In this document: positions 20,601 through 37,574 of the stretch, in pieces
How positions within the stretch are numbered: the first letter of the stretch is position 1
How the letters are laid out: each line of letters starts with the position of its first letter
From: Haplodiscus bocki
Taxonomy: Eukaryota
NCBI GenBank assembly: GCA_965655095.1
Contig: OZ296656.1
Span: 56,606,001 to 56,670,000 of the forward strand
Reading direction: 5' to 3'
Length of the DNA: 64,000 bases
The notes under the pieces: model-generated
What the model was told of the DNA's origin: nothing
The model's input: the letters and a program-made list of their open reading frames with translations, nothing else
The model's database searches: none
Made by a program: the position numbers and the translations under genes

Positions 20601-23600
20601 GAATTTTTCTGTTAACTCCCCCCCCTTCCCCCCAGTAGTAACGAGAAGTTCAACCCCCCTCTTCTGTGATTGGCTAAAATCATTCGCGCATGAGTTAACA
20701 CATTACACTGTTTATTATTCCGCATATCCAATATGGTGTGTGTGCGTGTGTGTGGAGGGGGGGGGGAGTTGACAAAATAGATTCAATTATTGAGTTAAGA
20801 AGAAACGAAAAAAAATATTATCAATGATATTATCAACTTAACAATAATGGCAAATTCCTACATTTACTGCAAAATGTTGAAAAATCAAAAGTTTTGGCAA
20901 TTCTATTTTTATTTTTAGGTTCTAAATTCGTAAAACTATTTGATATAAAAATTGAATCAAAAACACAAATTAATTTCGCCCATTTCTTCAGCCCCCCCCC
21001 CCCCCTCCTTCAGTACCAGTCCCCTTCTTACAACGGACTTCTGGAAGCATCGAAAATATACTGTGGTAGGGTTTTTTACAACGGGTTCGGGATTGAAGAA
21101 ACAGTGGGTGGGGGAGTGAAGAAGTAGAAGAAAAAGAAATAGGGGATGGAAAAAGTTGTGGTGCTGAATAAGTGGGGGGATTGAAGAAGTGAGAGATGAT
21201 TGAAAAGGGAGGTTTAAAAAATGGGGAGAGGGCGGGGGTAGATAATTAATTATTTTGAATATGTTGTTTTGATTCAACTTTTCTCAATTTTTACTATTTT
21301 GTACCTGTGCTCAATTTTCGGAGTAAGGAGAAAAAAAATATTCTCGGAGTAATGAAAATTTGAAAGTGTGAGTAAAAATTAAATGCCTAATTAAATCTGT
21401 TTTTAGTAAGCAAGACGCTCTTTCGCATTTTTATGTTAAGCGGGAGCTCAATTCAATTTTATGTTTACAGGCTTTATGTTATTTGTGACGTAATAAAAAA
21501 AATTCGACCTCTTAAAATGTCAGACTTTAGTTAATCAGACACTAAAACAGGTTCAAAACTGTTCTCCCACTTGTCAATCACAGCTTGTGATTCTAAGTTT
21601 AATCACCAAAGTGAAAGGTGCATCAGTTTGGTGAAATAAGAGTAAACAACTCTCAAAATCTCGAATCAAAAATTGTCATTTTCAAACTTTGAGCTTCAGT
21701 GGAGGTGCCAACTTGGTGATTGACGGTTGTGTCGCGATGACTTGAAAGAAGTTCCGATGTTTTGTTTACTCATATCAGCGTTTCAAGATTTTTCGAATTT
21801 AATTACATTTTTGAAATTTTTACTTGTAACGTTTTTTGGGACCTTATACCAGGTGGTTCGGACTTTTGCTCCCAAGAACAACTGAAATTTATTATTTCAC
21901 ATTTCATTTTTCCGATGGTTATATATTGAAAGGCATGAATTACTCGGAATAAATAATTGCATCAGTAATTGTTTTTGAGCGCATCCCTGGAAAATGTCAG
22001 GTAACTGGTTAATATTATTAAATAACAAGACGGCCGACTAGCACCGGCATATTTTTCGCAGGAACACAAAAATTTTGATTAACATTTGCCCACAGTTACA
22101 AACGAGACTATTGTTCAAAATCTAGTTCGCGAAAGTTTTCTACAAACATCAATTCCACCACTGATATCTATATTCTATGCAAAAGAGGGTATCACGACTT
22201 TTCGTTCAAATTTTTTTGTCTCACAGTACCGAAAAATTTCGCTGGGGAACACTTCGGTGTATCAGAAAATTTCGGGTAGCGAAAAATTTTATGCATAAGA
22301 AGGGGATATCACTAACCTCCGTCGAAAAATCTTTGTCTCACAGTGCCGATAAAATTCGTAGGAGAACCCTTCTGTGTTTCGAAAGAATTCTGGTATCGAA
22401 AAGTTTCAAGCAAAGGAGCGGGGAAGCTTCACGGTTTTGTCGAAATTTTTTTTATCTCACAGGACCGAGAAAACTTTGACAGGGAACCATTTTGTGTTTC
22501 AGAAAATTTCTGGTAGGGAAAAATATTTTATGGATAAGAGGAGGGGGTATCACGATTTTCCGTCGAACTTTCTGTCACACTGTACCGAAATATTTCATTG
22601 GAGAACATAGCCTAATTGTTGTGATAAACTTATTAAATAGTTTCCTATTGTCTATGATTGACTAATGATGATGACGGAGGAAGTCAAGAAGAAGTGAATA
22701 TGCCAAGATGCGTCACCAACATTAGAGCCAACGCAACATCACTGGGCTGCACTACATGTGGAAATTGGTACCACTTGAAATGTACCAAAATTGAAAAATC
22801 AGAACTGAAAAATTACAAAAATGCTCCCTATACTTGTAAATATTGCTTAAAAGATGAATATGAAAGCACCGTGATGCAATCTAAGAATCCTGGCCACATC
22901 TCGTCGAATGGACCGGGTTGTGCATCATCGGTGGGGCTAATCAGTCAGGGACTTGGGTCAGGTGTAGACGCCGGTTGCAATAGTGACGGAACCTTACCTG
23001 ACTCAGAACCTGATTCACCCGACGATTTCTGGAAAAAGCTCTCCGACAATGCACTTGCTACCCTGGAGGACATCTATAATGAGATAGTACATTGGAGGTC
23101 ACGCCATTTTGAGATCTACAACAACAAAGTAGGTAGAAAATTCGTTGATTGCATCAATGTGGCCTTATCAGCAATAGCCAATGACACTAAAGAGCAGAAA
23201 TTATCTATCCTGGCAGTCATGACCATGCCATACTTGGTCCTGATTAAGAACGAAAAACAAGGACGACGGATCTGTCAATGCAATTCTCAACCGGCGATTG
23301 AGTTTGTGGATTCAAGGTAAATTTATGGAGCTATTCAATGAAGCAAAAGCCCTCCATACCAGATCCAAAACGCTTTCCTGCAAGCGAAAAAGGGACCCCA
23401 GGAACAAGTTCATGAGGCACATGACGAACGGGAATGTTGCAAATGCCATCAGACAGCTCGAAGAAGACGAAGATGGTGGCGTACTAGACTTGTCCGACAA
23501 AATCGGAGACAAGACCGTGCTTCAGGTGTTAAAAGAGAAGCATCCTAGTCCAGTCAATGGACAGTTCATTGAGTCGCCGTCTGAAAACGTACTGCCGTTT

Positions 23601-26600
23601 CACCCATCAATCTTTGACAATTTGGATGACGATGCAATGAAACGAGCAGCCACAGTGACCAAGGGAAGTCCTGGCCCCTCCGGATTAGATGCGAATCAAT
23701 GGAGGAAAATGTTGACAGGAATGGAGCAAAGTTCTGTGAACTTGAGAAAGACCTGTGCCAAAATTTCAAGACGCATTGCCACTGAAACAATTGCTCCAAG
23801 TCACTTACGACCCTACAATGCATGTCGGTTGATACCACTAGATAAGAAGCCCGGAGTAAGACCAATTGGAGTAGGCGAAGTCTTGAGAAGAATAATTGGA
23901 AGATGCATTGCTAGGTGTGTGTCGGGGGATTTGAAGCACCTTGGTAGCAACATTCAATTGTGTCTAGGACAAAAATGTGGTATTGAACATGCGATACACA
24001 CATTGAGAGAAGAGTTTGACGCAGATGAATCATGCTCCATACTGTTGTTTGACGCTTCAAACGCTTTCAGTCTACTGAACCGAAAATTAGCTCTGGAAAA
24101 CATTGAGACGACATGCCCTTCTCTTGTCACAGCGCTTAGAAACTCATATTCCGAACCCTCTGACCTTCTCGTGAATGGCACCAAGCTCAAATTGGAAGAA
24201 GGGGTTACACAGGGTGATCCATTGTCCATGGCTATGTATGGGATAGATATTCTACCTCTGATCAAGAGACTCAACGTGACGAAGACATCCGAAAAATGGT
24301 ATGCAGACGATGGAAACTCAGCAGGCGAGCTGACAAAGCTGCGTGAGGTGTTTCGTGTTCTGCAAGAGGACGGCTCCAATTACGGATACTTTATCAATGG
24401 CCCAAAATGTCAACTAATAACAAAGAAAAACATGATGGAAGAAGCGAAGAGAGTCTTTCACAACACTGGAGTTCAAATTGGACCGAGTGCCAGGGTTCTG
24501 GGCTCTGTTATCGGCGATGCCTCGGCCATGAACATGTATTGTGAAGAAAAAGTGCAAAAGTACAGCCAGATGACCGCAAAATTGAGAGAATTTGCCCGAT
24601 CAAACCCCCATCCCCTATTTTCATCCTTAACTAAGGGCGTCCAAAGCAAACAGTCGTTTATGACCAAAACGACCCCAGAATTCCACCTGAAGCTCGATGG
24701 GGTCGAGAATTATATTTCAGAGAAGCTTATCCCCACGCTAACCGGAAGAGATGCCCCTAATGAAACACAGAGAGCTTCTCTCACTACCACTGAGAACAGG
24801 TGGTCTCAACATCCAGATGCCATCAAATTACTCTGAGAACTTCCATGGTCCAAGATGACTCCTGAACCCCTGGAAAAAGTAACCCCAGTGGTAGCTGAAA
24901 ACATCCAAAATCGGATCCTCAGCGACATCAAAACTGCCAAAGAAAGAAAGAACAAGGAAAAACTTCACAATATCAAATCAAAATTGAGCGAGGAAGAGAC
25001 TTACGCTTTAAATCTGGCATCTGAGAAAGGCTCCTCAAGCCGGCTGAACGCCCTACCCCTTGAAAGATACGGGTTCAACCTCACGAAGGGCGAACTCAGG
25101 GATGGGATGTTTTATACAGCTGGGAGCCCATAAACACGCCTGCGAAATGCCCCTGTTCCCAGAAGTTCTCACTGGCGCATGCCTTGCACTGCCCCAAAGG
25201 CGGATATACAATTATGCGCCACAACGAGATTAGGAAAAGCTTCGCCAATCTGATGGATGAAGTTTGCCACGACGTCCAGATCGAGCCCATGCTTCAGGAG
25301 CTGCAAGGGGAGACCTTTGACAAAACCACCTGCTCTGACGAGGAAGCTCGACCTGACATCAAAGCAAATGGACTCTGGGGACAAAGATTTGAGCGAACAT
25401 TTTTTGATGTGAAGATCTTCAACCTGCTTGCAAAGAGTTGCCCTAGAGAGATCAAGGAGGCATACAAATACCACGAGAAGATCGAAAAATTGAAATATGA
25501 AGACCGTATCCGCGAAGTCGAGGACAGCAGCTTCAACCCGATTGTATTTGCTTGCACTGGAGGAGCAGAACCCTCAGCGAGTAGAATCATGAAAAAGCTG
25601 GCAGAAAAAATTAGCATCAAGAAGAAAGAGAGCTACCCAGACACCCTCTCCTACATCTGGACTACAGTTGGATTCGCCCTTATTAAGAGTGCTACGCTCT
25701 GCATAAGAGGCTGCAGATCCCTGAAACCCTCTGTGCCTATAAACTATACTTCCGTATCCGCAATGATATCAGAAGCTGCAATAAATGAATCGAATTCCAC
25801 CTGAGAGCATTCCAAAAGAGTACTCTAAGAGAACTATTTTTTTGATGTATTTAATACATATTATTTATTGACTGTATCTAAGATACAAAATTGGAGAACA
25901 CTTTGGTGTTGCAGAAAAATTCATCGAAAATGTTCATGCATAGGAGGGGGGGCATCCCGGTTTTGTCGAAATTTTTGGTCTCACAGGACCGAAACCAAAA
26001 GCTTGGTAAAGGAACCCTTCTGTTTTCCGGAAATTTTCTGGTATCGAAAAAAATTTATGGATAAGAGGGGGCTTATAACGATTTTCTGTCGAAATTTTTA
26101 TGTCTCACAGTGCCGAAAACTTTCGTAAGGGAATCCTAGTATTTTTGAGAAACATTTTGGTTTCAAAAAGTTTTATGGATGAAAAGGGGGTTATCACGTT
26201 TTTCCGTCGAAAATTTTTGGTCTCACAGTGCCGAAAAATTTCGTGGCCATCCCTTCAATGTTTCAGAAAATTTGGGGTATCGAAAAAATTTATGCATAAT
26301 AGGGAGTGTCACAATTTTTCGTCTAAAATTTACTGTCTCACAGTGCCGAAAAACTTCGTATAGGAACCCTTTAGTGTTTCACTAATTTCGGGTATCAAAA
26401 ACTTAAGGATAAATCGTAAAATGGTAATATGCTAGCACCGGCATATTTTTCGCCCAACTACAAATATTTTGATCAACTTTTGCAAACGGTTAAAAACAAA
26501 ACTACTGTTTTGATATTAGTTTTACAAATTAGAGCTCTTACAAACATCAATTCCACCACTGATTTCTGTGCTTTATGCAGAAGGGTATCACGATTTTCTG

Positions 26601-29541
26601 TTGAAAAACTTTCGTCTCACAGTGCCGAAAAATTTCGTCGAGGAACCCTTCTGTGTTTCAGAAAATTTCGGGTATCGAAAAACTTCATGCCTAAGAGGGG
26701 AATATCACGATTTTCTATACAACCTTTTTTGTCTCACGGTGCCGAAAAAGTTCGTACGGGAACCCTTCAGTGTGTCACTAATTTCGGGTATCGAAAAATT
26801 TTATGCTTCAGAGAGTCACGACTTTGTGTCGAAATTTTTTTTGTCTCACAGTGCCGAAAAATTTCATAGGGGAACCCTTCTGTGCTGTGTTTCAGAAAAT
26901 TTCTGGTAGCGAAAAAGTTTATAGATAAGAGGGGGGGGGGGAGTATCAAGATTTTTCGTCGAAAATTATTTGTCTCGCAGTACCGAAAAATTTCGTGGGG
27001 GAATCCTTTAGTGCTTCATTAATTTCGGATATCGAAAAATGTTAGGGATAAGAGAAGGGGGGTTTCACGATTTTCCGTCGAAAACTTTTTGTCTCACAGT
27101 GCCGAAAATTTTCGTAGGAACCCCTTAGTGTTTCATTAGTTTCGGGTATCGAAAAATGTTAGGGATAAATCGTAAAAAATTTTGGCAGGGCAGTGACTCG
27201 AACCCCGAACCTACTGCTTGAGAACCTTGTTGTCCAAAGCCTACCGCTGTCATTTATTTTTGAATTAAAAGAGTTGGCAATTTTGGTCTGAAAAAAAAGA
27301 AAAACGACCCTACTGAATGAATAATTTTTCTAGTATATTATATATACTGCGAAAAATAATAAACATCTAAGAATCAGAGCATCATAATAACTTGTCTGGA
27401 TTTACCAGGCATTTTTCAAAGACGGATAAGACATCAATGACGAGTATGCTTAGGTAGAACTAGAGATAATTTCTTGTTAGGAGACAGAGACCAAAAGGAG
27501 ACTGAAACGATATTCCTCGTTCAATCTCTGTCACACGGTTCCCTATCGGGCGTTTAGGTTTTTTCCTATCATAATGTGAGCTAAAACAAAAACAAGTTCA
27601 GAAAATCTCACGATTCTTAATCGCAATGAAAATTACAACTTTTGTTTTCCGACTGCCCACTTCAACACACCCTTATAAAAGTGACTTTATCCTGCCGTAG
27701 GCGGGTTGCGAATGCTAGTCACATTCATCCTCTTAAAAATAATGTTCGATGACTGGACACCTTTTGTTGGAACTCCACTATGGCTGTAGAGCATGGACTC
27801 TCTTCGAACAAACTCAAATGCATTCTTTGCATTGCTAGCACCGCTTCTGCTCAAACCCGAAACACTTAAACTCTCGGAGGTCCAAATGATAAATAATAAA
27901 AACTGATGTTTTAAGCGTGCTCTTGTGAAAACCCTGAATAAGAAAGCAATACTCGAAGATGAAAACTTACCAGCAAAGTGGTCGGTTTTCAAGTTGTCAT
28001 CGAGGGCTGCCAACGCATTTGATTCCACAGACTCCAAAAAAGCGAGAAGACTCTGAAAAATAAATGGTTTACATTTTGGCAGTCAGAATACTACAAGCAA
28101 TAACCGAGGATCATCCAGAGGCATACTTACGGGATGGTTCAACGGCACAGATTTTTTGTCGATGGCTCCTCGTTCTTGAGTTTGTGCCTAAAGTAATTCA
28201 ACTCGTGAAGCATTCAAGCTTAAGATTGGGTGAGCATTCGACGTCATCTTGCGAACACATCACTGAAGATTTTCGCGATCTTCAGTTAATAAGGTGTAGA
28301 TGATTTCCACTTCCAATTTTTCTAGTGTTTCTAACAAGTTTTCAGCTGCATTATATAATATAAATACGAAGTACTCCTAAAAGAAACATCGACAGCGAGA
28401 AATTCGGACGATCCAACACTTTATGTAAAATCAAGCGGTTGGAAAAACGGCAAAACGGAGCAACTCCATTTATTTAGCGAGAGCATACAAGCAAGCAAAT
28501 TCAGACTTTAGCATTGATGTGCAATATCATCGACTGACCAACTTAGAGTTATGTGATATTTTGTTTCAGACTGAATGCCTGTAATAGCTGACCTATCACC
28601 GGTAAAATAAACCATTTAAAGAAGCTAATTGAATCAATGACAAAGTAGGTGGAGGTAGTGCGTTAAGCAGACAAGGCAATAAAAAAACAAACCAAAAAGC
28701 AGAATAAACTACGCCAGATAGCTATTCTTTGCAAGCTGAGTGTTCTCCGGAGTAGTTTCAATGACTAATCAAATTGAAGCATTCGTTCGTTTTCATTACT
28801 TTTCTTTTTTGTCTCAGATTAAGTATTTTCTGTTTCATTGCTTGTCTGTCTAACGCCGGGGCTCCAAGTTAGACGTATTTTTGTCCGTAAGTAAATGATA
28901 CCTCATTGATATGAATAACGCCAGGATAACTCCCTACATTTTTCCATCTTCCAACTTCGTTCAAAAATGCACGGCAAAAAAGGCATTCAGAAAGGAAAGC
29001 GATGTTGTTGAAACATCACTGGCGAGGAAAAAAAACCAAAATTTCTGAGGCGTAATTTTCCAACGCTTAGAAAATTGGACCATAAAGTTATCGACAAACT
29101 TCGTCACAACCTAAAAACTCTGTAAAACAGATTTCGGTCAATTAATAATTTTTGAACCAAAACTGATATTGAATACGCATTCTGGGACAAAATTCGTAAA
29201 TTTCCATGGCATGAAATATTTATCGCGCAGCACTGTCAAACTTATCCAAGTGCTGCCAAAGACAATTCTTCGTTGAAATTTGTCTTTGAGTTGCGAAAAC
29301 CTATTTTCAGTTGCATTTATCGGCCAGTATGCTTAAAACCCATGACTATGCTAAAAGTAAGGGCAATCATAAATCTTACTTCAACATGCTTCCTCTTCAA
29401 AAGCTGAGTTGAACGAGAAGCGAAAACTCTTGGGTCTGTCTGAATTAAGCAATCTCGGATGTACCTCTGCTCGTTCTCTTTAGCATCGTAGCTTGTAATT
29501 TCTACAACTTCTGACGTTACATCAGAGAATATTAATGACAT
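14536..29541 (-). CDS. WDR34: Cytoplasmic dynein-2 intermediate chain 2 (WDR34), complete 12-exon gene, 561 aa
   Basis: Exons 29541-29380, 28187-28131, 28052-27971, 20037-19712, 19643-19569, 19393-19187, 17775-17696, 17631-17561, 17026-16913, 16694-16537, 15157-14934, 14665-14536. All GT-AG, phases consistent, total 1686 nt. Motifs LSWNSQG..HEDWCLHK, LAFHP..AAGSFNGEV, FIVGSETGGLFKC, CPFHRN, WSPFRPMVLAA. Confidence 0.92.
14934..15157 (-). CDS. WDR34: WDR34 exon 11
   Basis: tttcag|AEPSLTL..VDWSPFRPMVLAAVTQSGKLFLFDL..KFNIS|gtac. Confidence 0.9.
16537..16694 (-). CDS. WDR34: WDR34 exon 10
   Basis: ttttag|..APHFCPVTYVATCPFHRNIVTTCSTDATIRVYNVLQ|gtcagc. Confidence 0.88.
16913..17026 (-). CDS. WDR34: WDR34 exon 9
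   Basis: ttttag|..TFSQDQTSFIVGSETGGLFKCSF..|gtaagt. Confidence 0.88.
17146..17537 (+). mobile_element. Complete intronic copy of the ~390-bp Helentron/HINE-like family
   Basis: 5' hairpin gcgaagc..gcttcgc; 3' hairpin acacttgc-tttt-gcaagtgt; no TSD seen. Confidence 0.7.
17561..17631 (-). CDS. WDR34: WDR34 exon 8
   Basis: gtttag|..QVLLAESLTSAKLRSTTGDASLG|gttagt. Confidence 0.8.
17696..17775 (-). CDS. WDR34: WDR34 exon 7
   Basis: tttcag|LASAGQDGKILLSSLDERNKQLTLLS..|gtaagt. Confidence 0.88.
17966..18268. mobile_element. Intronic MITE-like foldback
   Basis: ggaccaagtgaaca-poly(C) at left, poly(G)-tgttcacttggtcc at right; internal direct copies of aagtgaccaagtgaacaat. Confidence 0.6.
18442..19178 (+). 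mobile_element. Copy of the ~390-bp repeat family, split by a nested MITE
   Basis: Both halves align with the 17146-17537 copy. Confidence 0.7.
18567..18949. mobile_element. Mutator-type MITE with 9-bp TSD
   Basis: TSD ctcataaat at 18558-18566 and 18950-18958; TIRs ggt..catagcgtcgaaa / tttcgacgctatg..acc with subterminal repeats. Confidence 0.8.
19187..19393 (-). CDS. WDR34: WDR34 exon 6
   Basis: ggcag|GCLTTLAFHPCNPSLLAAGSFNGEVFIYDLS..HTEPISTVLW..FM|gtaagc. Confidence 0.9.
19569..19643 (-). CDS. WDR34: WDR34 exon 5
   Basis: ttttag|SQIVLWNINRNNIDPKKPHNSLECT|gtaaac. Confidence 0.88.
19712..20037 (-). CDS. WDR34: WDR34 exon 4
   Basis: atttag|..YDVDWNEE..VSCLSWNSQGNLFAAS..HEDWCLHK|gtaagt. Confidence 0.9.
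22610..22640 (+). other. Putative spliced-leader exon copy GCCTAATTGTTGTGATAAACTTATTAAATAG
   Basis: Lies at the 5' end of the element; 27-nt exact match to 31996-32022 at the 5' end of an unrelated LINE. Confidence 0.7.
22654..25804 (+). pseudogene. PHD-RT-RLE polyprotein, broken into four ORF pieces
   Basis: PHD GCTTCGNWYHLKC..YTCKYC; RT LDKKPGVRPIGVGEVLRRIIG, FDASNAF, EGVTQGDPLSM, WYADD; HCPKGG..RHNEIR knuckle; RPDIKANGLW..FFDVK endonuclease. Confidence 0.9.
27971..28052 (-). CDS. WDR34: WDR34 exon 3
   Basis: tttcag|SLLAFLESVESNALAALDDNLKTDHFA G|gtaagt. Confidence 0.85.
28131..28187 (-). CDS. WDR34: WDR34 exon 2
   Basis: ctttag|AQTQERGAIDKKSVPLNHP|gtaagt, phase 0/0. Confidence 0.8.
29380..29541 (-). 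CDS. WDR34: WDR34 exon 1 (coding part)
   Basis: MSLIFSDVTSEVVEITS..LIQTD..STQ..HVE|gtaaga; QT/TQ motifs typical of dynein intermediate chain N-termini. Confidence 0.8.
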
Positions 29542-29999
29542 TTCAACGATTGACCAAACGGTCCCCTACATGTACTTCTGAAACATGACATACATCCATT
29601 CCGTTTTAAACCGTGTAGTTAGCATGAACGCAAAAAAAATCAAGACGTCACCGCTAATGGCATGATTAGATCTAGTCGATAAAGGTAAAATGTGCCCCAA
29701 GCCCAATCGACCAACACGGAAAAAAACAAAGAATTGAATAAAACGGTAGTTTATATATTCAAAAGGGAAACTAATCAGGTTTATTTTGCGAATTGAATTT
29801 TTTCATTATTACGCTGTTCGTCTGTGTCCCGAATTAATTTCTCGTGTGTAGAACAGTTGTCTTCTTCATTTTTAATTGATGGTACACCACAGGGTGGCAT
29901 CTTCCCAACGATTGATGATCTGAAAGGCACGAAGATTCATGACGAAAATCTTCGCCATCTGGGGACAGACTAAAAAATCAACAGGACATAAACTTGAAG

Positions 30000-31860
30000 A
30001 TTTATATTGAAGTTTTCTTGTAGTTCATTTCTACTCTCTCTACACACAGGTAGACTCCTGATCTGCAGGCTGTCTGGCTTCTGTCAATCAGCTCCTTCCA
30101 TGGACGACCACGTCAATCCGGAAAAATTCTATTGTGTATTCCATTTATTCAGCCTCGTTTGAAAGAAAACTTGCACCTTCTATCACGGCTTCTGTACTCT
30201 AGAGTGGGTAGCTTCGACAAGTCTTCCAGGATGTCCTTTTCATAAGGCTTGGCATCAGCCTGGCTACTCGCCATTTGAATTCTCAACCGCTAATTTGTCG
30301 TCTTTTTTTTTGAGGTAAGATTCAATAAGATTTGTGACCTCCAGATGAGGCATCGTCAACTCTTTGTAAAAAGGTTCCCATGATGTCCTTGGTAATTTCA
30401 AAAAACCTTCTCTGACTAATTCGATCCTGCTATCAGCTATCTTGATTTTCTAAAATATGTGACTACTGCACAAGAGTGTGCAATCGACTACTACTCTCAA
30501 TCGTTCATTTTCTACATTCCTGAATGAAATTTTGCCATCTGTGGAATGAATTTTGCTCCGGTTATCTTCCGCTCATATGCACATCATGGAAGATCATCCA
30601 ACAAAGCGAAGCCTCAATTGTCAATTTTCCGAGCAGAATTCCAGATTCTGATTTTTACCGCCATATTGTAACAAATTTGCCGTAGATTGAGACTGAAGTA
30701 ATAATTTTCAATTACATACGAAAATTGTAACTTTTTAACGGTGGTCAAAATCGATGAAGGTAGCAAACTTACTGTAGAAAGCCACCAAATGATGCCGATT
30801 CATTCGAAATGTTTTTCATCTTAATTCTGAGGTTTTTCCAGAAAATCAGAAAACTTTCAATTCTGGAAAAAATGGAAAATTCGATATATTTTTTGAAAAT
30901 TTTCCGCGAAAATTCCTATGCACCTTCTGTAATCATTATTATAACTCTTGAATCATCCGAATAGAAAAAATTTTTCGTTTTACTCATTCTGTCAATGACT
31001 TTGTATCGCCCGATGATTATTGGTCCGAAGATCAATCCTTTAGCACGCCACTCAAATGTTGCCCATGAAGAGTAGGTGTCATTCACTGCCAACCGCTCCC
31101 TCCGATAGGTCAAAAAATCGGTGACCTAGTCATCAGTTCTACCTCCTAGCCCATAATTAGCTTTGGTCTGTACCATTCTTATAGGTGGGACTCTCCAGAA
31201 GGCCTTTTGGAAGTAAACGCAACATTTCGTTGCCATCTCTAAGTCTGGGTCCCGTCAACTAGCGTTCTCAGAAGCTGTACACTTCTTCAGCAACCGGGTA
31301 AACCCAAATTCTTCGTCCGATAACTTTTTTGACCGAAGAACTCAAACAAGGGTCTACTAAGGCTCTTTCAATAGATTCAACAAAGTAAAGTCAAAGTTAC
31401 AACTGTAACTGTTTGGGTCGGTTTTTCTTTCTATTGCCGCTATTTGAACACATTCTTAACTGTCGGGGAATTCACACATTAACTCTCGGGGATTTCAGTT
31501 TCTCCGAAGCTTTTCATAGAGTTGGAGCTGCTCCAGTTCTTGTGTCGTACTGAGCCCGCGTGTGCAAGTTATCTAGTCCCAATAACTTAGTTCCATAAAA
31601 TTTTTCATGTTCGACCTTGCTATGTTGTATTCGGCGAACTGTAATCCATCGGAGTTGCTATTCTTGGTTTTTATTAAAATCCCAACCGCCAGGGTTTCCT
31701 TTTGTATAATCTGAGTTGAAGATAGTTGCTAGAGCTTCCAATTTTTCGTTGTCCAAAGTTGCACCTGTTCTGTCCTGCTTGAAAAGAATTTTTAGCTGCT
31801 GTTGTTCAAGAACCGTTTTGGATTAGGCCTAATTTAACTGGTCTGTCATTCCCGCATGAG
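30000..31860 (-). mobile_element. Heavily decayed CR1/L2-like LINE fragment (RT region)
   Basis: Remnants YFQKAF, frameshifted SGVPxGxxxGP region and FYSDDSR (ORF 30916-31113). Confidence 0.65.
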
Positions 31861-31995
31861 CGAAACATGCGATATCAACAAATCCCTATAATCAGGTTAA
31901 GTTGTATATGTATGAAGCCACTGTTGTCACTAATATTAAGGCAAATTTTTTCATCTTTACGCCGGATAAAACTAAAGATGCAACTTTACTTCTTT

Positions 31996-32024
31996 CTAAT
32001 TGTTGTGATAAACTTATTAAATGG
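31996..32024 (+). other. Second putative spliced-leader copy CTAATTGTTGTGATAAACTTATTAAATGG
   Basis: 28/29 identity to 22612-22640; directly after the TSD and 15 nt before the ORF1 ATG (32040). Confidence 0.7.
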
Positions 32025-32039
32025 TGTGTTTCATATCTG

Positions 32040-32828
32040 ATGGCAGCTGCGAGGGGCCGCCGTGGTGGCTCCGTATCGGAGGACAACTGTGTCAAATGCA
32101 AGAAAAAGAGCGGTGGCTGCTGGTTTCAATGCGATGCTTGCGACTCCTGGACCCACGCAGAGTGTATGTCTATGACAGCAGAGGAGTACCAAACGCTGAA
32201 GAAGTTTCCAAACTTCAGATACTAATGTGACCATTGTTTCCCGAAGACAACTGTCAATGCCACATTGCAATGCGCAGAAATAAAGAACAATTTCTCGTCC
32301 CTTGAAAAGAAAGTCGAAAAAGCACTTCAATTCGTCGAGAAAAAAGTGAATGAAAGTGAAATGAACACTCCCGAACACGTACGCAAACAACATTCACAAG
32401 ACTGTAGTACCGGAACTCGAATTCAAAACGTCCCGAAAATTGCATCACAAAACTCAGCGCAGACGCTTCAGCACGACATGAAGCACGTCATGGCTATTTT
32501 GAAGCATACAATTGGCGAAAAACCCACTATTTCCCACTGCTTCCGAATTGGTGAATATGACGAAACCAAACGAAGAGGCACCATCGTGAAGTTCTCAAAT
32601 ATTTGGACGACACGAAAAGTCCGGCATTTTCTCACTATATGAAAGATTATCCAGCTGATTACCGTAAATTAATATCACGTGAACTAACAAACAAAGAGCG
32701 TATAGTATAAAGAGCTCTCCTTATGAAGCGTTGCGATCTCTTTGAAAATGGAACAAAACGGACGTCTTTCAGAATTCGTAACTTGAAACTCTATGTTGAT
32801 GGAAACGAGCAACCGGCAAATTTATGAC
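32040..32828 (+). pseudogene. LINE ORF1 with PHD finger, coiled coil and RRM-like region
   Basis: CVKCKKKSGGCWFQCDACDSWTHAEC..Y*CDHC; CFRIGEYDETKRRGTIVKF. Confidence 0.85.
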
Positions 32829-32845
32829 AACCAACATACTGCAAT

Positions 32846-35399
32846 TTGATGTTGATTAACGCTCGCTCAGTAAAGAAACCCAACGTTGTTTTCCATTTAT
32901 CCACTGATCTTGCTGCACAATATTTAGACTGGTGTTTTGTCACGGAATCGTGGCTAAATTCTGACATCGACGAACTTTTCATCTCAATTCCAAATTACAA
33001 TCCCTTTGGCTGTGACAGATCCGCAAAAAACTCAAAAAAGAACAACCATGGAGGTGGCGTATGTTCCTACGTTCGGAGCAATTTCTAATGTACCCAGGTA
33101 TACCTTCAAGGCAATGAGCAATTCGAAGTATTGTGGTTAGAAAACGATTTTATGAGTCTCTGTGCTCTTATTTGTGTTGCCTACTACCCATCCATTTGAG
33201 ATTATGACAAGGACCTGTGTGCATATTTGATTCAGGCTTACGAGCATCTCTGCCTCGCAAAAAACTACTGGCAGTTTATTATGTGTGGTGATTTCAATGA
33301 TCTTTGCATCGACAATGTCATTGCGGAGTGCAACTTGACGCAGATCAATTTTGAACCCACACATAACAATAAAGATCTCGACAAAGTTTTCGTTTCTTGC
33401 CCATGGAAAATATCGACAACTCAAACCGTTATTCCGACTGCTTCAACAGACCACGATTGAGTATTATGTTCTTTGCAGACTCCCAGGAATGGAAAAAAAA
33501 GTCTTTTTTTTTCAGAGACCAACTTGAAGGTTGCTGCCAAATGTGTTACAAACTTCTTCGTGATGCGAATTATAAATGTGTGTACAGATCAATGGATCCC
33601 AACGAAGCTCTGTGTCAACTAAATTCTATCTTGTATTCCGCATTTTACATCTCCTGTCCAACTCGCCAAGTGACTGTCCGTGATCGAGATCCGATCCACG
33701 TTACCCTTGCCGTCAAATTGCTAATAAAACAGCGAAACAAACAATTACGCAAACAAAATGCAGCTAAAGTTAAAGACTTGAACGCGCGTATTCGAAATCT
33801 TGTTCAGAAGAACTGCCCAATTCTCAATAAAGTTGGCTCTCGCAACTGGTGGACACATATCAATAGTCTTTCGAAAGATAAACAACCTGCTTCGCCTGTG
33901 AACGTTGATGTGATATCCTTAATCGGTATTTCAATTCGTTTTCAAATGACACTAACAGCCAGCCACAATTAGAGAAAATTGAATTTCCAAAACGAGAAAT
34001 CCCTTAATCTTACCCCCTAGAGGTTTATCATTAACTGAAGAAACAAAAACAAACGTCACATGAATCTAGTGGTCTTCCCTTTCGGATATTTACTCACGCA
34101 GCTGAAACTTTAGCAGAACCCATTTGCTCGTTGTTTAATCTTATCTTACTCTCACGCACTGTCCCTGACTTTTTCAAGATATTTAATATCAGACCTATTC
34201 CAAAAGTTGCTTGACCAACACTTCCGAAACTTTTTTGACCAATCGCAGTCACTCCAATATTGTCGGGGTTAATTGAACGCATGCTGTACGATAAATGCAT
34301 GAAGAAGCCCTATAACACTTATATTTGCTCGAAACAATTTGCTTTTCGACAGAATAGTTCAACGTGCAGCGCCCCTGTTAACCTACTTCATGACGTGTAT
34401 TCTCTGCGAAGAAAAAATTACAACTATATTCGACTTATTACACTGGACATGTCAAAGGCCTCCGACACTATTCAGCAATCGGAAATCTTCAAAAAAATCT
34501 CCCGATGTGTACCTCTGCTTAACGAATATGTGGTGGACGGTTTAAAGTGTTTTCTAACTTCTCGCAGTCAAAACACATCATTGGTTTCCAGATTCTCGAC
34601 GCCGGCTTCAACTAATCTCAGTGTTCCCCAGGGGACAGAAACGGGTCATATTATCTTCAATCATGCCGTCAATGACACCTTTCGATGCGAATTTTTAATG
34701 TCACCTAGTACACGAATCACAGTATATGCTGATGATAACAGTCCTTTGATTGGCGGCACTTTTACAGGCCGAGACAACGCATTCGATAAAATACCTAAAT
34801 CTGGTGACCACTTCTGCTCCAAGAACCTCTCTTTCAACGCTCCCAAAAGCTACAAAATGCTGTTGAATTCTGGTCAACATGACGTTCCACTTATCTCTGG
34901 CATCGACAGAAAGTCTTCTGTTAAATTACTTGGCATCTTATTCGACGAAAAGTTGAGTTTCAATGATCATGTGAAATGCATCACAAAACGAGCCACTGCC
35001 AAGTTATACGTTTTTTTTTCGGTTAAGGAGAATTGGGTTCTCTATTTGTGAACTAACACTTCTCTATAAGGCTCTGGTATTACCCACACTTACGTATTGC
35101 TGCTCAGTTTGGGGCGGAACATCTGATGAGAACCTCCGAAAGATTAACAGAGTTCAGTCTAAAGCAGTTCTTCTTGGGATCATCAGGGAGCACACTCCTA
35201 TAAAAGACATCATTCGTGTACCCGATGAAAAATTATACAAACAGATCCCTTGATCAAGGGGAGAATCATGTCCTCCACGAAATACTGCCAAAACGAACCA
35301 CAGGAACGTTCTGTTTATGAGAAAAAACACCAGCATTACTAAATTTGAACACGAACTAAGACTGTTTCCCTCTCGTATACTGCGTTCTTATCAGGTATA
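32846..35399 (+). pseudogene. LINE ORF2 (AP endonuclease + reverse transcriptase), frameshifted
   Basis: INARS, VTESWL, GGGVCSYV, CGDFN, LDKVF, TDHD; RT QFAFR, LDMSKASD, VPQGT, YADD, KLLGILFD. Confidence 0.9.
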
Positions 35400-37374
35400 A
35401 TGTTTATGTTTCCTAGTGAAAATAGATGCTCTTTTTGTTTTTGAATAAATTTCTTCTTCTTCTTCTTCTTCTTCTTCTTTCTGTCCCACTTCCCCCAGTA
35501 AGAAAGAGGCTATGGGTTTTTCAAACTACCATGTATTTTATCTGGGAAGTATTGCTCAGCTAAGAGAAACATCGTCATTCATCCAATGTTGAGAAATCTC
35601 CATGAAGATGTCATAATCCGACGAAGGCTGGAAAAAACTACACCAGGTATGAAACACCCTGGAAAGTTTTAACCGGAACGCTAAACTTCATTACGAGAGC
35701 CTGCTGTAGCAACTCGAGAGACAGAATTTTCAAATGAACCGGAATGCAATTTCTTCGGAAAACATCACTTCGATGTTTTTCTTCACTTTGTCTTGTTCTG
35801 AACAGCATAAAAATAAGCTCTTGTTGGAACGAAACAACTATGAGCAAGAAGACTATGACAAGAGATTAGGAGGTCAATTGAAACTTAAGCGGTCAGCATT
35901 TCAAAACTGAGGAAAGTAAGTTACGGAGACTGCCGTCATCGTCATCAGCTTTCCTCCATGTGACAAAAACCTTCGTTCTTGACTGTTACAATGATTTTGT
36001 GTTCACCGGTTTCAAGTGGGAAGATGAACACCACTACCCAAGCTTTGATTGAAAATCAAATTTCATCAACTTTATCAAATTTTCGATAAACACTGATTTT
36101 GAAAGCCTAACTGCTGAGCTGATATACCTTATTTTGGTTGGAATAACGGAAATTGGAGTTATGTCCCAGTTTGGCTTAATCTGAGAGAGAGACAATAGTG
36201 AGCAATGGTCTAACAAAAGAGCACAACAGAAGTTTATCAAATGTTCATGAAATTGGTGAAGTTCAATGAAAATTGAAACTGCCTGGAATCAACACAGTTC
36301 AAGGTTTTGATCATACTTAAATCAGTAAACATAACCCACCCATCGTGACTCAACTCATGCAAGTTTTTCCGGATAACTCTGTTGTGCTCCTTATGTGATA
36401 CTCCACTTTGAATTCATGCAATCTCATCGCGCTTAACTTCCAGAAATATCAAGCTGCATTGACTACAGCCAGCAGTTGTGGCGGATTCACTTTCATACAC
36501 TAACTAATTCGACAGCATAGCAATTAACGAGCCCAAGAAAACCCGCAGATGGTAAGAAGTTCTTCCTACCATCGGTCATGGAACCACGCAAACTACCACA
36601 ACACAACACAAATTTTGGCAACCAGTTTATCTGGAACCACCAGCACGACCGTCCCTATTGCTATCCACAGTTCAATTAGAACCACTCTTACGCACGTTCG
36701 TTTTTTATGTTACAGCACCTCACTCGCACGACCTTCTTTATTGTCGTCTTCGCTAGATTCATCTTCCGTAAACAGAGCCATTTTTTAAACGCATTGTACA
36801 CCACATCAAAATTTCACCTAATTTTACCAACCTTAAATCAATTTTTGAACTTTATGCTAACTATTGTCAATTTCGAAAGAAATGAACGGAGGGAAGTAAA
36901 ATAAACTAAAAAAAATCAAGCTGGATGAAAACAACAGTTGTGATTGCAGCCCGATCATGAGCGCCCAAAAGGACAACGTGAAAACTAGACTTAAACACGT
37001 GGTTCAGCCCAAAAAAGCAATGAGCGAATCAGGAAACACTTTGCTTCCCCAACTCACCATATGGACAATTTCTTTTGCTTCTGAATACTTTTCTTTTTTC
37101 AAATTTCTGACTTTGGCTCTAATTACTGAAGAAGTGCTAATCTTGTAGCATAGTCCTTCTGTCTGAGTTCTTTAAAAATGGTTTTAATGGATTTATTCAG
37201 ACACTTTGCCCAAAGGTTTTTCACACTATGGCCGTGGTTTGAATTTCCTTGTGGAGACACTTCCTACAACAGATTTCGACTCCCGCATTTACGCATTTAA
37301 AGTTGTTTCTAGTGTTTCTTTACTGTCATGACCCTAATAGAAAACAATTCACAGTTTTAACGCAAAATTTTCCA

Positions 37375-37574
37375 NNNNNNNNNNNNNNNNNNNNNNNNNN
37401 NNNNNNNNNNNNNNNNNNNNNNNNNNNNNNNNNNNNNNNNNNNNNNNNNNNNNNNNNNNNNNNNNNNNNNNNNNNNNNNNNNNNNNNNNNNNNNNNNNNN
37501 NNNNNNNNNNNNNNNNNNNNNNNNNNNNNNNNNNNNNNNNNNNNNNNNNNNNNNNNNNNNNNNNNNNNNNNNNN
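37375..37574. other. Assembly gap (200 N)
   Basis: Run of n. Confidence 0.99.

What the first reader, a model, noticed from the sequence alone, without database searches (positions are those of the whole stretch)
22608..32040. Two unrelated retrotransposons begin with the same ~29-nt leader: a probable spliced-leader exon, implying SL trans-spliced transposon mRNAs
Seen: CTAATTGTTGTGATAAACTTATTAAAT is identical at 22612-22638 and 31996-32022, followed by AG in one copy and GG in the other. Each copy sits just inside the left TSD (attggagaaca; cttctttct) and 13-15 nt before the first ATG. One element is RLE-type (CRE-like), the other APE-type (CR1/L2-like), and I see no other nucleotide similarity between them. 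Established: SL exons are short AU-rich leaders added to many unrelated mRNAs, and retroposed copies keep them. CRE/SLACS and NeSL elements insert into SL genes, but here the target is a satellite and the leader is inside the TSD. Inference: this organism trans-splices, and LINEs of different clades get their capped 5' end from the SL. The terminal AG of the copied leader could act as a new trans-splice acceptor, letting a promoterless copy be matured from any read-through transcript.
Basis: partly seen in the sequence, partly recalled or inferred. Interest (0 to 1): 0.92.

Follow-up and report, generated by a model that had tools for sequence, protein, structure and literature searches.

The report
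Jumping genes that start with the spliced leader
The shared leader is this acoel worm's already published spliced leader, copied into DNA at the very start of many unrelated LINE jumping genes. Their RNAs were therefore trans-spliced before they jumped, which is a clean example of something already noted in flatworms and Hydra.

Summary
The 27-mer is exact at 22612-22638 and 31996-32022, with none expected by chance.

It is the core of a 32-nt leader, AGCCTAATTGTTGTGATAAACTTATTAAATAG. This matches the spliced leader (SL) published for the acoel Symsagittifera roscoffensis (PMC9911081). I found the SL RNA gene: leader followed by GTAAGT, a donor stem-loop, a U-rich Sm-like site and a 3' hairpin. 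It occurs in about 670 tandem copies linked to 5S rRNA.

At least 315 perfect SL copies (about 700 with one mismatch) are dispersed through the genome. Each has unique DNA upstream and a sharp boundary. They head at least 15 unrelated sequence families, and at least 10 of these are LINEs. All 23 5'-complete copies of element 1 begin with the SL. So does every readable 5'-complete copy of element 2.

Element 1 is an R2-type (RLE) LINE, shown by a fold match to R2. Element 2 is a PHD-APE-RT LINE.

One SL variant (T25A) that no SL gene encodes recurs in at least 12 families. The leader is therefore drawn from outside the element lineage.

I obtained no RNA evidence, because the available runs behave as DNA. 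Trans-splicing in this species is published. SL-tagged transposon transcripts (Hydra) and SL relics at LINE/LTR loci (parasitic flatworms) are also in print. First readers of this scan flagged the same idea in other windows of this genome.

The parts
22597..22607 (+). Left target-site duplication of element 1 (ATTGGAGAACA). 22608 is one extra T between the TSD and the leader.
   Evidence: the same 11-mer occurs at 25890-25900.
22609..22640 (+). Complete 32-nt spliced-leader relic (AGCC...AAATAG) forming the 5' end of element 1.
   Evidence: It is identical to the SL RNA gene exon and to the published SL.
22609..25889 (+). Element 1: a degenerate RLE-type non-LTR retrotransposon of about 3.28 kb, ending in ...ACAAA.
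   Evidence: There are 29 genomic matches, 23 of them 5'-complete and all with the SL.
22700..23320 (+). Element 1 N-terminal ORF with a PHD finger. A 3-codon uORF lies upstream at 22654.
   Evidence: PF00628, E=2.6e-6.
23244..24836 (+). Element 1 reverse transcriptase ORF (YADD).
   Evidence: RVT_1, E=7.7e-10; 887 homologs.
25064..25804 (+). Element 1 C-terminal restriction-like endonuclease domain (CxC..H..C, RHN, E-P, RPD, D-V-K).
   Evidence: motifs. (61% identity to aa 688-918 of the single-ORF relative P0005). (invariant C34, C36, H44, C48, H58, D104, D121, K147). (model pLDDT 82; the top 7 PDB hits are all R2 proteins, E 2e-6 to 3e-4).
25890..25900 (+). Right target-site duplication of element 1.
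26031..27168 (.). The ~118-bp satellite into which element 1 inserted. The same repeat lies left of the element.
   Evidence: TRF. (depth 1e5-1e6, against 25-35 for unique DNA).
31996..32024 (+). Spliced-leader relic of element 2. It lacks the first 3 nt (AGC), and its terminal AG is mutated to GG.
   Evidence: Other copies of the family read ...AAATAG|TGTGTTTC.
31996..35473 (+). Element 2: a degenerate PHD-APE-RT LINE of about 3.5 kb with a (CTT)n tail. Its possible TSD, CTTCTTTCT (31989-31997 and 35474-35482), is ambiguous with the tail.
   Evidence: At least 77 copies carry this 5' start.
32040..32225 (+). Element 2 ORF start with a PHD finger.
   Evidence: PF00628, E=3.2e-6.
32828..33457 (+). 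Element 2 APE endonuclease remnants (INARS, GDFN, DHD motifs, with frameshifts).
   Evidence: motifs. (Exo_endo_phos, E=0.0036, below the Pfam cutoff).
34239..35051 (+). Element 2 reverse transcriptase (YADD).
   Evidence: RVT_1, E=1.7e-8.

Best explanation
The shared leader is a DNA copy of the host's 32-nt spliced-leader exon. The SL RNA is made from large tandem SL-5S rRNA arrays. LINE precursor RNAs, of both the RLE and the APE type, received this capped leader by SL trans-splicing. Full-length target-primed reverse transcription then copied the mature SL-LINE RNA into DNA, so every full-length insertion begins with the SL, just inside its target-site duplication. These steps are shown at the DNA level; the RNA step is inferred.

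A further inference, at about even odds, concerns how copies are re-expressed. All readable 5'-complete copies carry the relic, and families hold mixed SL variants. New template RNAs are therefore probably made by read-through transcription of relic-bearing copies, followed by a fresh trans-splice at or next to the relic's terminal AG. The relic itself looks like a 3' splice site: CUAAU, then a U/A-rich tract, then AG. This would regenerate the same 5' end without the element having its own promoter.
For: 1. Identity with the SL. The leader equals the SL published for S. roscoffensis and the exon of a gene with ...AAATAG|GTAAGT. That gene has a donor stem-loop, a U-rich site and a 3' hairpin (z=-3.6). 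It has 668 perfect tandem copies, each unit carrying 5S rRNA.

2. Dispersed copies. 315 perfect full-length SLs are followed by A, C or T, on all chromosomes. Of the 1435 copies of the 27-mer core (one mismatch allowed), about half are not genes.

3. Anatomy. Upstream DNA is unique. The boundary is sharp at A1 of AGCC in most copies, and the junction is always at the exon's last base.

4. Breadth. 15 distinct 5' families occur among 32 loci, plus two more RLE families. At least 10 have PHD, APE, RT or RLE domains.

5. Completeness. 23 of 23 5'-complete copies of element 1 have the SL. In the element 2 family, 48 copies match the SL junction, about 13 more have the SL joined 2 nt further in, and the remaining readable copies also have the SL.

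6. Alternative junctions at AGs 6 nt apart occur within one family (L030 versus L025 and L029).

7. The T25A leader variant heads at least 12 different families, although no SL gene in the assembly has it (all 86 hits were inspected). Two other variants recur in both families studied.

8. Tandem SL-SL is nearly absent: one case, in which the second SL lacks its own AG.
Against: No RNA evidence was obtained. The only runs found behave as DNA.

I found no SL-less source copy with a plain outron and acceptor, so the trans-splicing substrate has not been observed.

The element 1 phylogeny is a star. It therefore cannot separate 'a fresh SL each round' from 'the SL inherited from a few masters'.

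The recurrent T25A variant could in principle be a mutational or reverse-transcription hotspot rather than a sampled SL RNA variant. A reverse-transcription hotspot would still tie it to the SL RNA, but a DNA hotspot would not.

The composite L004 (SL, 64 nt, truncated SL, body) is a single unresolved event.

In four families the 13 nt after the junction can pair with the SL's 3' end, including the AG. This could hide that AG rather than offer it as an acceptor.
Confidence: 0.83

Rival explanations
1. The leader was acquired once or rarely, by trans-splicing or capture. It is now simply part of each element's 5' UTR. Copies are transcribed from an internal promoter that starts at SL nt 1 and pass the leader from parent to daughter without further trans-splicing.
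For: All readable 5'-complete copies carry the relic, including any masters. The phylogeny is a star, which fits a few master copies. From general knowledge, internal promoters are common in LINEs, and in Ascaris the SL sequence itself is part of the SL RNA gene promoter.
Against: The leader is identical across at least 15 families that share no other similarity, and it is identical to today's SL gene, while the adjacent UTRs are unrelated. The same leader variants recur across unrelated families and across both junction sub-types of one family. Alternative AG junctions occur within a family. The SL gene's TATA-like element lies upstream and is not carried by the copies.
Confidence: 0.12
2. 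The reverse transcriptase switched template from the LINE RNA's 5' end onto SL RNA, or onto another SL-capped mRNA, during integration. This would add the leader without trans-splicing of the LINE RNA.
For: From general knowledge, template jumps at LINE 5' ends are known, for example the U6-L1 chimeras. A few copies have odd or partly duplicated 5' ends (L063, L070 and L079).
Against: The junction is always exactly at the exon's last base. No SL intron sequence is ever present. The leader is complete to nt 1 in most copies, and the body start point is constant within each family.
Confidence: 0.03
3. The elements are SL-gene-specific LINEs, like CRE, SLACS or NeSL. On this view the leader is target DNA from an SL gene, or read-through from the SL promoter.
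For: RLE-type LINEs are often site-specific.
Against: The copies are dispersed with unique flanks, and the TSDs are of non-SL sequence (the ATTGGAGAACA TSD lies in a satellite). The whole exon is present but nothing of the SL gene's upstream region or intron. APE-type families show the same pattern.
Confidence: 0.02

Closest known systems
Spliced leader of Symsagittifera roscoffensis (Martinez et al. 2022/2023, PMC9911081)
   Same: The sequence is the same. The published leader, GCCTAATTGTTGTGATAAACTTATTAAATAGA, covers nt 2-32 of the leader found here. SL RNA genes are present in many copies.
   Different: The paper reports trans-splicing of 30.2% of genes. It says nothing about leaders at LINE 5' ends. 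Its main text and supplement mention LINEs only as 1.68% of the genome. Here the leader starts one base earlier (A) in both the gene and the relics.
SL-like loci at LTR/LINE elements in parasitic flatworms (MBE 2025, PMC12582326)
   Same: Leader sequences are found in DNA next to retrotransposons. [quoted passage not shown]
   Different: There it is a passing remark about 597 discarded loci with partial leaders. Here the complete leader is the regular 5' terminus of all readable full-length copies in many LINE families, in another phylum. There is also TSD evidence and variant evidence.
SL-tagged transposon transcripts in Hydra (Genome Biol 2025, PMC12220107)
   Same: TE RNAs, including full-length CR1 LINE transcripts, carry the host SL at the 5' end.
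   Different: That is RNA-level evidence, with no report in that text of leaders fixed in the genomic copies. Here the evidence is at the DNA level and RNA is missing.
DinoSL relics in dinoflagellate retrogenes (recycled cDNAs; PMC12014239, PMC5585692)
   Same: A DNA copy of the SL marks the 5' end of retroposed units and is re-trans-spliced when they are expressed.
   Different: Those are host genes with truncated relics, often stacked, because the acceptor lies inside the relic. Here they are LINEs with a single complete relic, and stacks are nearly absent (1 case). This is expected if the acceptor is the relic's last AG.
Co-transcribed, promoterless LINEs processed at the 5' end (R2 and L1Tc with HDV-like ribozymes; general knowledge and PMC4035085)
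   Same: A LINE relies on host read-through transcription plus an RNA-processing step that defines its exact 5' end. Element 1 has an R2-type endonuclease.
   Different: Here the processing step would be spliceosomal SL addition, which also supplies a cap, rather than self-cleavage. Insertion is not rDNA-specific.
CRE/SLACS/CZAR and NeSL-1, LINEs that insert into SL genes (general knowledge)
   Same: They are RLE-type LINEs associated with spliced-leader sequence.
   Different: Those elements target the SL gene and carry only its first bases as flank. Here the whole exon is inside the TSD at non-SL targets.

Membership tests
Spliced-leader RNA gene / SL exon | The leader is immediately followed by a GT splice donor within a small-RNA gene. 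| tested here: met
   AGCC...AAATAG|GTAAGT, with 668 perfect copies.
Spliced-leader RNA gene / SL exon | A stem-loop holding the donor site, a single-stranded Sm-type site, and a 3' hairpin. | tested here: met
   the donor lies in a 15-bp stem, followed by the U-rich stretch UUUUAUUUGA and then a 10-bp hairpin; MFE -27.3, z=-3.64. The Sm site departs from the strict RAU4-6GR consensus, as it also does in flatworms.
Spliced-leader RNA gene / SL exon | Tandemly repeated genes, often linked to 5S rRNA. | tested here: met
   Arrays lie at C9:72.47 Mb and about C11:90.8 Mb. 5S rRNA scores 117.8 bits in the unit.
Spliced-leader RNA gene / SL exon | The leader is found at the 5' end of many unrelated mRNAs. 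| not testable with these tools
   The runs found behave as DNA. The feature is published for this leader: 10,433 genes.
RLE-type non-LTR retrotransposon (R2/CRE/NeSL/R4/HERO group): element 1 | RT followed by a C-terminal CCHC plus PD-(D/E)xK endonuclease, with no APE domain. | tested here: met
   RVT_1. Motifs. Invariant C, C, H, C, D, D and K columns. Fold matches to R2 proteins, E 2e-6. No APE hit.
CRE/NeSL clade specifically ('CRE-like') | Site-specific insertion into spliced-leader genes. | tested here: not met
   The window copy lies in a satellite with a non-SL TSD, and 23 copies have unrelated flanks. Phylogenetic placement among the RLE clades was not tested.
APE-type LINE (CR1/L2-like): element 2 | An N-terminal apurinic-like endonuclease before the RT. 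| tested here: inconclusive
   The window copy is degenerate. Exo_endo_phos scores E=0.0036, below the cutoff, though the INARS, GDFN and DHD motifs are present. Other SL-led families show clear APE (E 2e-11, 7e-11). RT is met. Clade placement was not tested.
SL-relic retrocopy (dinoflagellate-type recycled cDNA) | A DNA-encoded leader at the 5' end of a retroposed unit, inside the TSD. | tested here: met
SL-relic retrocopy (dinoflagellate-type recycled cDNA) | Truncated relics stacked in tandem after repeated rounds. | tested here: not met
   There is one SL-SL tandem in the genome and no full+full tandem.

The most novel reading that the evidence does not exclude
The retro-copied leader may be a self-renewing processing cassette. 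Its CUAAU, U/A-rich tract and terminal AG would form a built-in trans-splice acceptor. Any host read-through transcript that crosses a LINE copy would then be cut and capped at exactly the element's first base. This would let promoterless LINEs of unrelated clades (R2-type and APE-type) propagate.

In a subset of families, a 13-nt sequence just after the junction is complementary to the SL's 3' end and mimics stem-loop I of the SL RNA. It could act as a guide that recruits the SL RNP.
Probability: 0.3. Interest if true: 0.8.

Novelty: new member of a known kind. Interest (0 to 1): 0.5.

Why it matters
How LINEs obtain a defined, capped 5' end and a promoter after each jump is a basic problem for these elements. 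The known answers are internal promoters and self-cleaving ribozymes.

In this genome, many unrelated LINE families carry the host's spliced leader as their exact 5' end. This points to a third answer: the host's trans-splicing machinery defines the end and supplies the cap.

The system is unusually clean. The leader is complete, the junctions are sharp, hundreds of copies exist, and both major endonuclease types are represented. The species also has published RNA-seq data and an established leader, so the idea can be tested directly.

The leader is also a practical marker for full-length LINE insertions. It is a caution for SL-gene annotation as well, because about half of all leader matches in this genome are not SL genes.

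Tried and rejected
1. RNA evidence from reads. The one run search gave four runs of unknown kind. When laid on 21400-27399, they covered the unique flank contiguously at depth 25-35, the element at 300-600 and the satellite at 1e5-1e6. They are therefore DNA and say nothing about RNA.

2. RNA evidence from short contigs that encode relatives (P0010, P0018, P0027). These were metagenomic or other-organism DNA without any leader.

3. Tree test of 'inherited versus refreshed' leader in element 1. The phylogeny is a star and the shared variants are not sisters, so the test does not discriminate.

4. Looking for a propagating composite (SL, flank, relic, body) as proof of upstream re-trans-splicing. 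The 64-nt spacer of L004 is unique in the genome, so this remains unresolved. The internal SL in L021 is best read as a nested insertion.

5. L003 versus L010 as alternative acceptors. The bases at the junction differ, so this is not a clean case.

6. SL genes that encode the recurrent variants. There are none for T25A and one each for the other two, too few to explain the frequencies.

7. General SL-complementarity after the junction. It is significant only in L002, L016, L024 and L093 (p 0.000-0.02) and absent elsewhere (mean z -0.67).

8. A PDB sequence search with P0005 gave no hit; only the fold search worked. The protein atlas search for the L010 ORF gave only weak PHD-like leads below 0.8.

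A 15-nt anchor gave many unrelated hits, so only recognisable family members were read.

The N run at 37375-37574 was left untouched.
Full report
OBSERVATION. The 27-mer CTAATTGTTGTGATAAACTTATTAAAT is exact at window 22612-22638 and 31996-32022 on the + strand. No shuffle of the window gave a match even with 3 mismatches allowed. It is followed by AG in the first copy and GG in the second. The first ATG lies 13 and 15 nt further on. A blastn of the two elements against each other finds nothing significant except this 27-mer (E=5e-9).

Element 1 spans 22609-25889. It is flanked by an 11-bp target-site duplication, ATTGGAGAACA (22597-22607 and 25890-25900), with one extra T at 22608. It sits in a ~118-bp satellite. 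Element 2 runs from 31996 to about 35473 and ends in a (CTT)n tail. Its proposed TSD, CTTCTTTCT, cannot be separated from that tail.

WHAT THE LEADER IS. In the whole 1.50-Gb genome the 27-mer occurs 1435 times with at most one mismatch; the reversed control gives 0. In 30 loci taken from that list, the DNA upstream is different every time. The boundary is sharp, and the common unit extends 4 nt further 5' and 2 nt further 3'. This gives a 32-nt unit, AGCCTAATTGTTGTGATAAACTTATTAAATAG.

The same 32 nt followed by GTAAGT occur 668 times in tandem arrays. The arrays lie on C9 from 72.47 Mb, about 15.8 Mb from the window, and on C11 near 90.8 Mb; a few copies lie on C2. One unit reads ...TTTT|AGCC...AAATAG|GTAAGT.... 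It folds into a stem that holds the donor site, then a U-rich single-stranded stretch, then a 10-bp hairpin (-27.3 kcal/mol, z=-3.64). A 5S rRNA gene lies about 210 nt downstream in the same unit (117.8 bits). This is the anatomy of an SL RNA gene.

The leader equals the spliced leader published for the acoel Symsagittifera roscoffensis, GCCTAATTGTTGTGATAAACTTATTAAATAGA. In that species 10,433 genes (30.2%) are reported as SL trans-spliced (PMC9911081 and its preprint). The genome is therefore that species or a very close relative, in a different and larger assembly. The window's GC content is 35.5%, against 36.7% published. The statement that the organism trans-splices is thus not new.

THE DISPERSED COPIES. 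315 perfect 32-nt leaders are followed by A, C or T rather than GT, and they are spread over all chromosomes. Allowing one mismatch, about half of the 1435 hits are not genes.

The 32 loci I could read (30 fetched plus the two in the window) fall into 15 different downstream sequence families. Two more families came from relatives of element 1 found in other assemblies (L093 and L095). Domain scans show PHD fingers, APE endonucleases and RTs in at least ten of them. None of the sampled loci is an evident host-gene retrocopy; four small families or singletons remain unannotated.

For element 1's family, 29 genomic matches were found. All 23 that reach the 5' end begin with the leader. Most have the full AGCC start, and each has a different flank. 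For element 2's family:
- 77 copies have the 5' body start.
- 48 match leader plus body within three mismatches.
- About 13 more have the leader joined 2 nt further in (AG|TGTTTC, verified for C2:58990999).
- The copies I could not place at first also show the leader once their upstream bases are read, some with a small deletion.
I found no copy that has the element's 5' end but lacks the leader.

THE TWO ELEMENTS. Element 1 has a PHD finger and an RT (YADD). Its C-terminal ORF carries C-x-C...H...C, RHN, E-P, RPD and D-V-K. That ORF is 61% identical to residues 688-918 of P0005, an intact 918-aa single-ORF relative. In an alignment of 27 relatives, the zinc-knuckle residues and D104, D121 and K147 are invariant. 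The AlphaFold model has a mean pLDDT of 82. It matches R2 retrotransposon proteins in the first seven places of a PDB fold search (E 2e-6 to 3e-4, probability 1.00), followed by the Prp8 endonuclease-like domain. Element 1 is therefore an RLE-type LINE.

It is not 'CRE-like' in behaviour, because it does not sit in SL genes. I did not test its clade.

Element 2 has a PHD finger, frameshifted APE remnants and an RT. The APE remnants show INARS, GDFN and DHD motifs, and Pfam Exo_endo_phos scores E=0.0036, below the cutoff. Sister SL-led families have clear APE domains.

HOW THE LEADER GOT THERE. Four points argue for spliceosomal addition to the LINE RNA followed by full-length reverse transcription.
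1. The junction is always at the last base of the SL exon. No intron base and no base of the SL gene's upstream region is ever present.
2. The leader lies inside the TSD at non-SL targets. This rules out insertion into SL genes.
3. The leader is identical in families that share nothing else, and it is identical to today's SL gene, whereas the adjacent UTRs are unrelated. It is therefore not an old shared module.
4. Within one family the leader is joined at two AGs 6 nt apart: SL|TTTGAG|ATATTATG in L030, against SL|ATATTATG in L025 and L029.

A fifth point bears on whether the leader is renewed at each round. The variant T25A (...CTTAATAAATAG) is found in front of at least a dozen different families and in both junction sub-types of element 2's family. 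It gave 86 hits, against 25 for the reversed control. No SL gene in the assembly has it (none of the 86 hits is followed by the SL intron). Two other variants recur in both families studied and exist as single gene copies.

A change that recurs across unrelated element lineages is not inherited with any one of them. It belongs to the leader's own source. That source could be a variant SL RNA population, past or unassembled, or a leader-specific misreading during reverse transcription.

Tandem leaders are almost absent. There is one case, in which the second leader lacks its first two bases AG; this is what trans-splicing at the AG that begins a relic would give. There are no full+full tandems.

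Every readable 5'-complete copy carries a relic. Taken with the points above, the most economical cycle has four steps. A relic-bearing copy is transcribed by read-through. A fresh leader is spliced at the relic's own terminal AG. The identical 5' end is regenerated. The RNA is then copied back into DNA. The relic does look like a 3' splice site: CUAAU at nt 4-8, with its A 25 nt before the end, then a U/A-rich tract, then AG.

This last step is inference, and I put it at about even odds. The element 1 tree is a star and cannot test it. No outron-containing precursor was seen.

WHAT I COULD NOT SHOW. There is no RNA evidence. The four runs that hold the stretch cover the unique flank without differences at depth 25-35, the element at 300-600 and the satellite at 1e5-1e6. 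They are therefore genomic DNA. Short contigs encoding relatives were DNA from other organisms.

COMPARISON WITH WHAT IS KNOWN.
- The leader and trans-splicing in this species are published. That paper and its supplement do not connect the leader with LINEs.
- In Hydra about 30% of TE Iso-Seq reads, including full-length CR1 transcripts, carry an SL (PMC12220107).
- In parasitic flatworms 597 SL-like loci were set aside because they were associated with LTR and LINE elements. [quoted passage not shown]
- In dinoflagellates, SL relics mark retroposed host genes and stack up after repeated rounds.

The kind of thing is therefore known. What this genome adds is a very clean case in another phylum. 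The complete leader is the regular 5' terminus of many LINE families of both endonuclease types. TSD evidence is present, and a variant pattern points to renewal at each round. The relic architecture, a single copy ending in AG, also differs from the dinoflagellate stacks. First readers of this scan flagged the same idea in several other windows of this genome, and one follow-up described LINEs piled up inside the SL genes. I confirmed the SL gene and its identity myself, but not that pile-up.

VERDICT. The novelty class is 'new member of a known kind', and interest is moderate (0.5). The more novel reading is a self-renewing trans-splice acceptor that makes unrelated LINEs independent of a promoter, possibly helped in some families by an SL-complementary guide. 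The evidence does not exclude it, and it can be tested with existing RNA-seq.

Noticed in passing
L002, L016, L024, L093 (first ~25 nt after the leader); not in the window copies: Four SL-led families, APE-type and RLE-type, share GCTGTTTAATAAGT 5-9 nt after the junction. It is complementary, with one G-U pair, to SL nt 20-32 including the terminal AG, and so mimics stem-loop I of the SL RNA. Duplex energy is -10 to -17 kcal/mol (p 0.000-0.02 against shuffles). The other 14 families show nothing.
   Followed up: partly
G000:C9:72.47-72.68+ Mb (L032-L060); also about C11:90.8 Mb and C2:147.40-147.45 Mb: The SL-5S rRNA tandem array has a variable unit length (1732, 1900, 2068, 2236, 2572... bp, in steps of 168 bp), so there is an internal 168-bp repeat of variable copy number. 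A second array of similar size lies on the opposite strand. Four isolated copies are spaced 15.6 kb apart on C2.
   Followed up: no
G000:C3:10621357-10626012; C2:107188625-107199012; C2:143513353-143515906; C8:32688331-32690794: SL-led LINE 5' ends recur head-to-tail at regular spacing (about 1535, 2458/3949, 2506 and 2434 bp). These are tandem arrays of LINE copies or of their 5' parts. The four C3 copies share two leader variants, so that array grew by DNA duplication.
   Followed up: no
G000:C2:94693358-94693420 (-): This is the only tandem leader-leader in the genome. The two 32-mers overlap by the dinucleotide AG, so the second lacks its own AG. That is the product expected if a fresh leader was spliced at the AG that begins a relic.
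   Followed up: partly
L004 (G000:C1:25472519-25472583, -): The layout is a full leader, then 64 nt found nowhere else in the genome, then a 5'-truncated leader, then a PHD-APE LINE body. It is either a read-through plus upstream trans-splice product whose parent is missing, or a nested insertion into an SL-led single-copy retrocopy.
   Followed up: partly
window 22000-22600 and 25900-27400: The ~118-bp satellite around element 1 reaches a summed contig depth of 1e5-1e6 in the DNA runs, against 25-35 for unique DNA. It is therefore one of the most abundant repeats of this genome.
   Followed up: no
window 22654-22665: The first ATG after the leader in element 1 opens a 3-codon uORF (ATG ATT GAC TAA). 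The PHD ORF starts at 22700.
   Followed up: no
L062 (upstream of its leader): About 20 nt upstream of a complete SL-led copy of element 1 lies TTTTAGCCTAATTTTT. This resembles the SL gene's start site plus the first 9 nt of the leader.
   Followed up: no
L090 (TARA metagenome scaffold, 3245 bp): A 766-aa relative of element 1's RT (46% identity) sits on a marine metagenome scaffold about the size of a full element, without this leader. Related RLE LINEs therefore occur in other marine organisms. Named hits include a coral, Montipora.
   Followed up: no
window 37375-37574: A run of 200 N (a gap or masked stretch).
   Followed up: no
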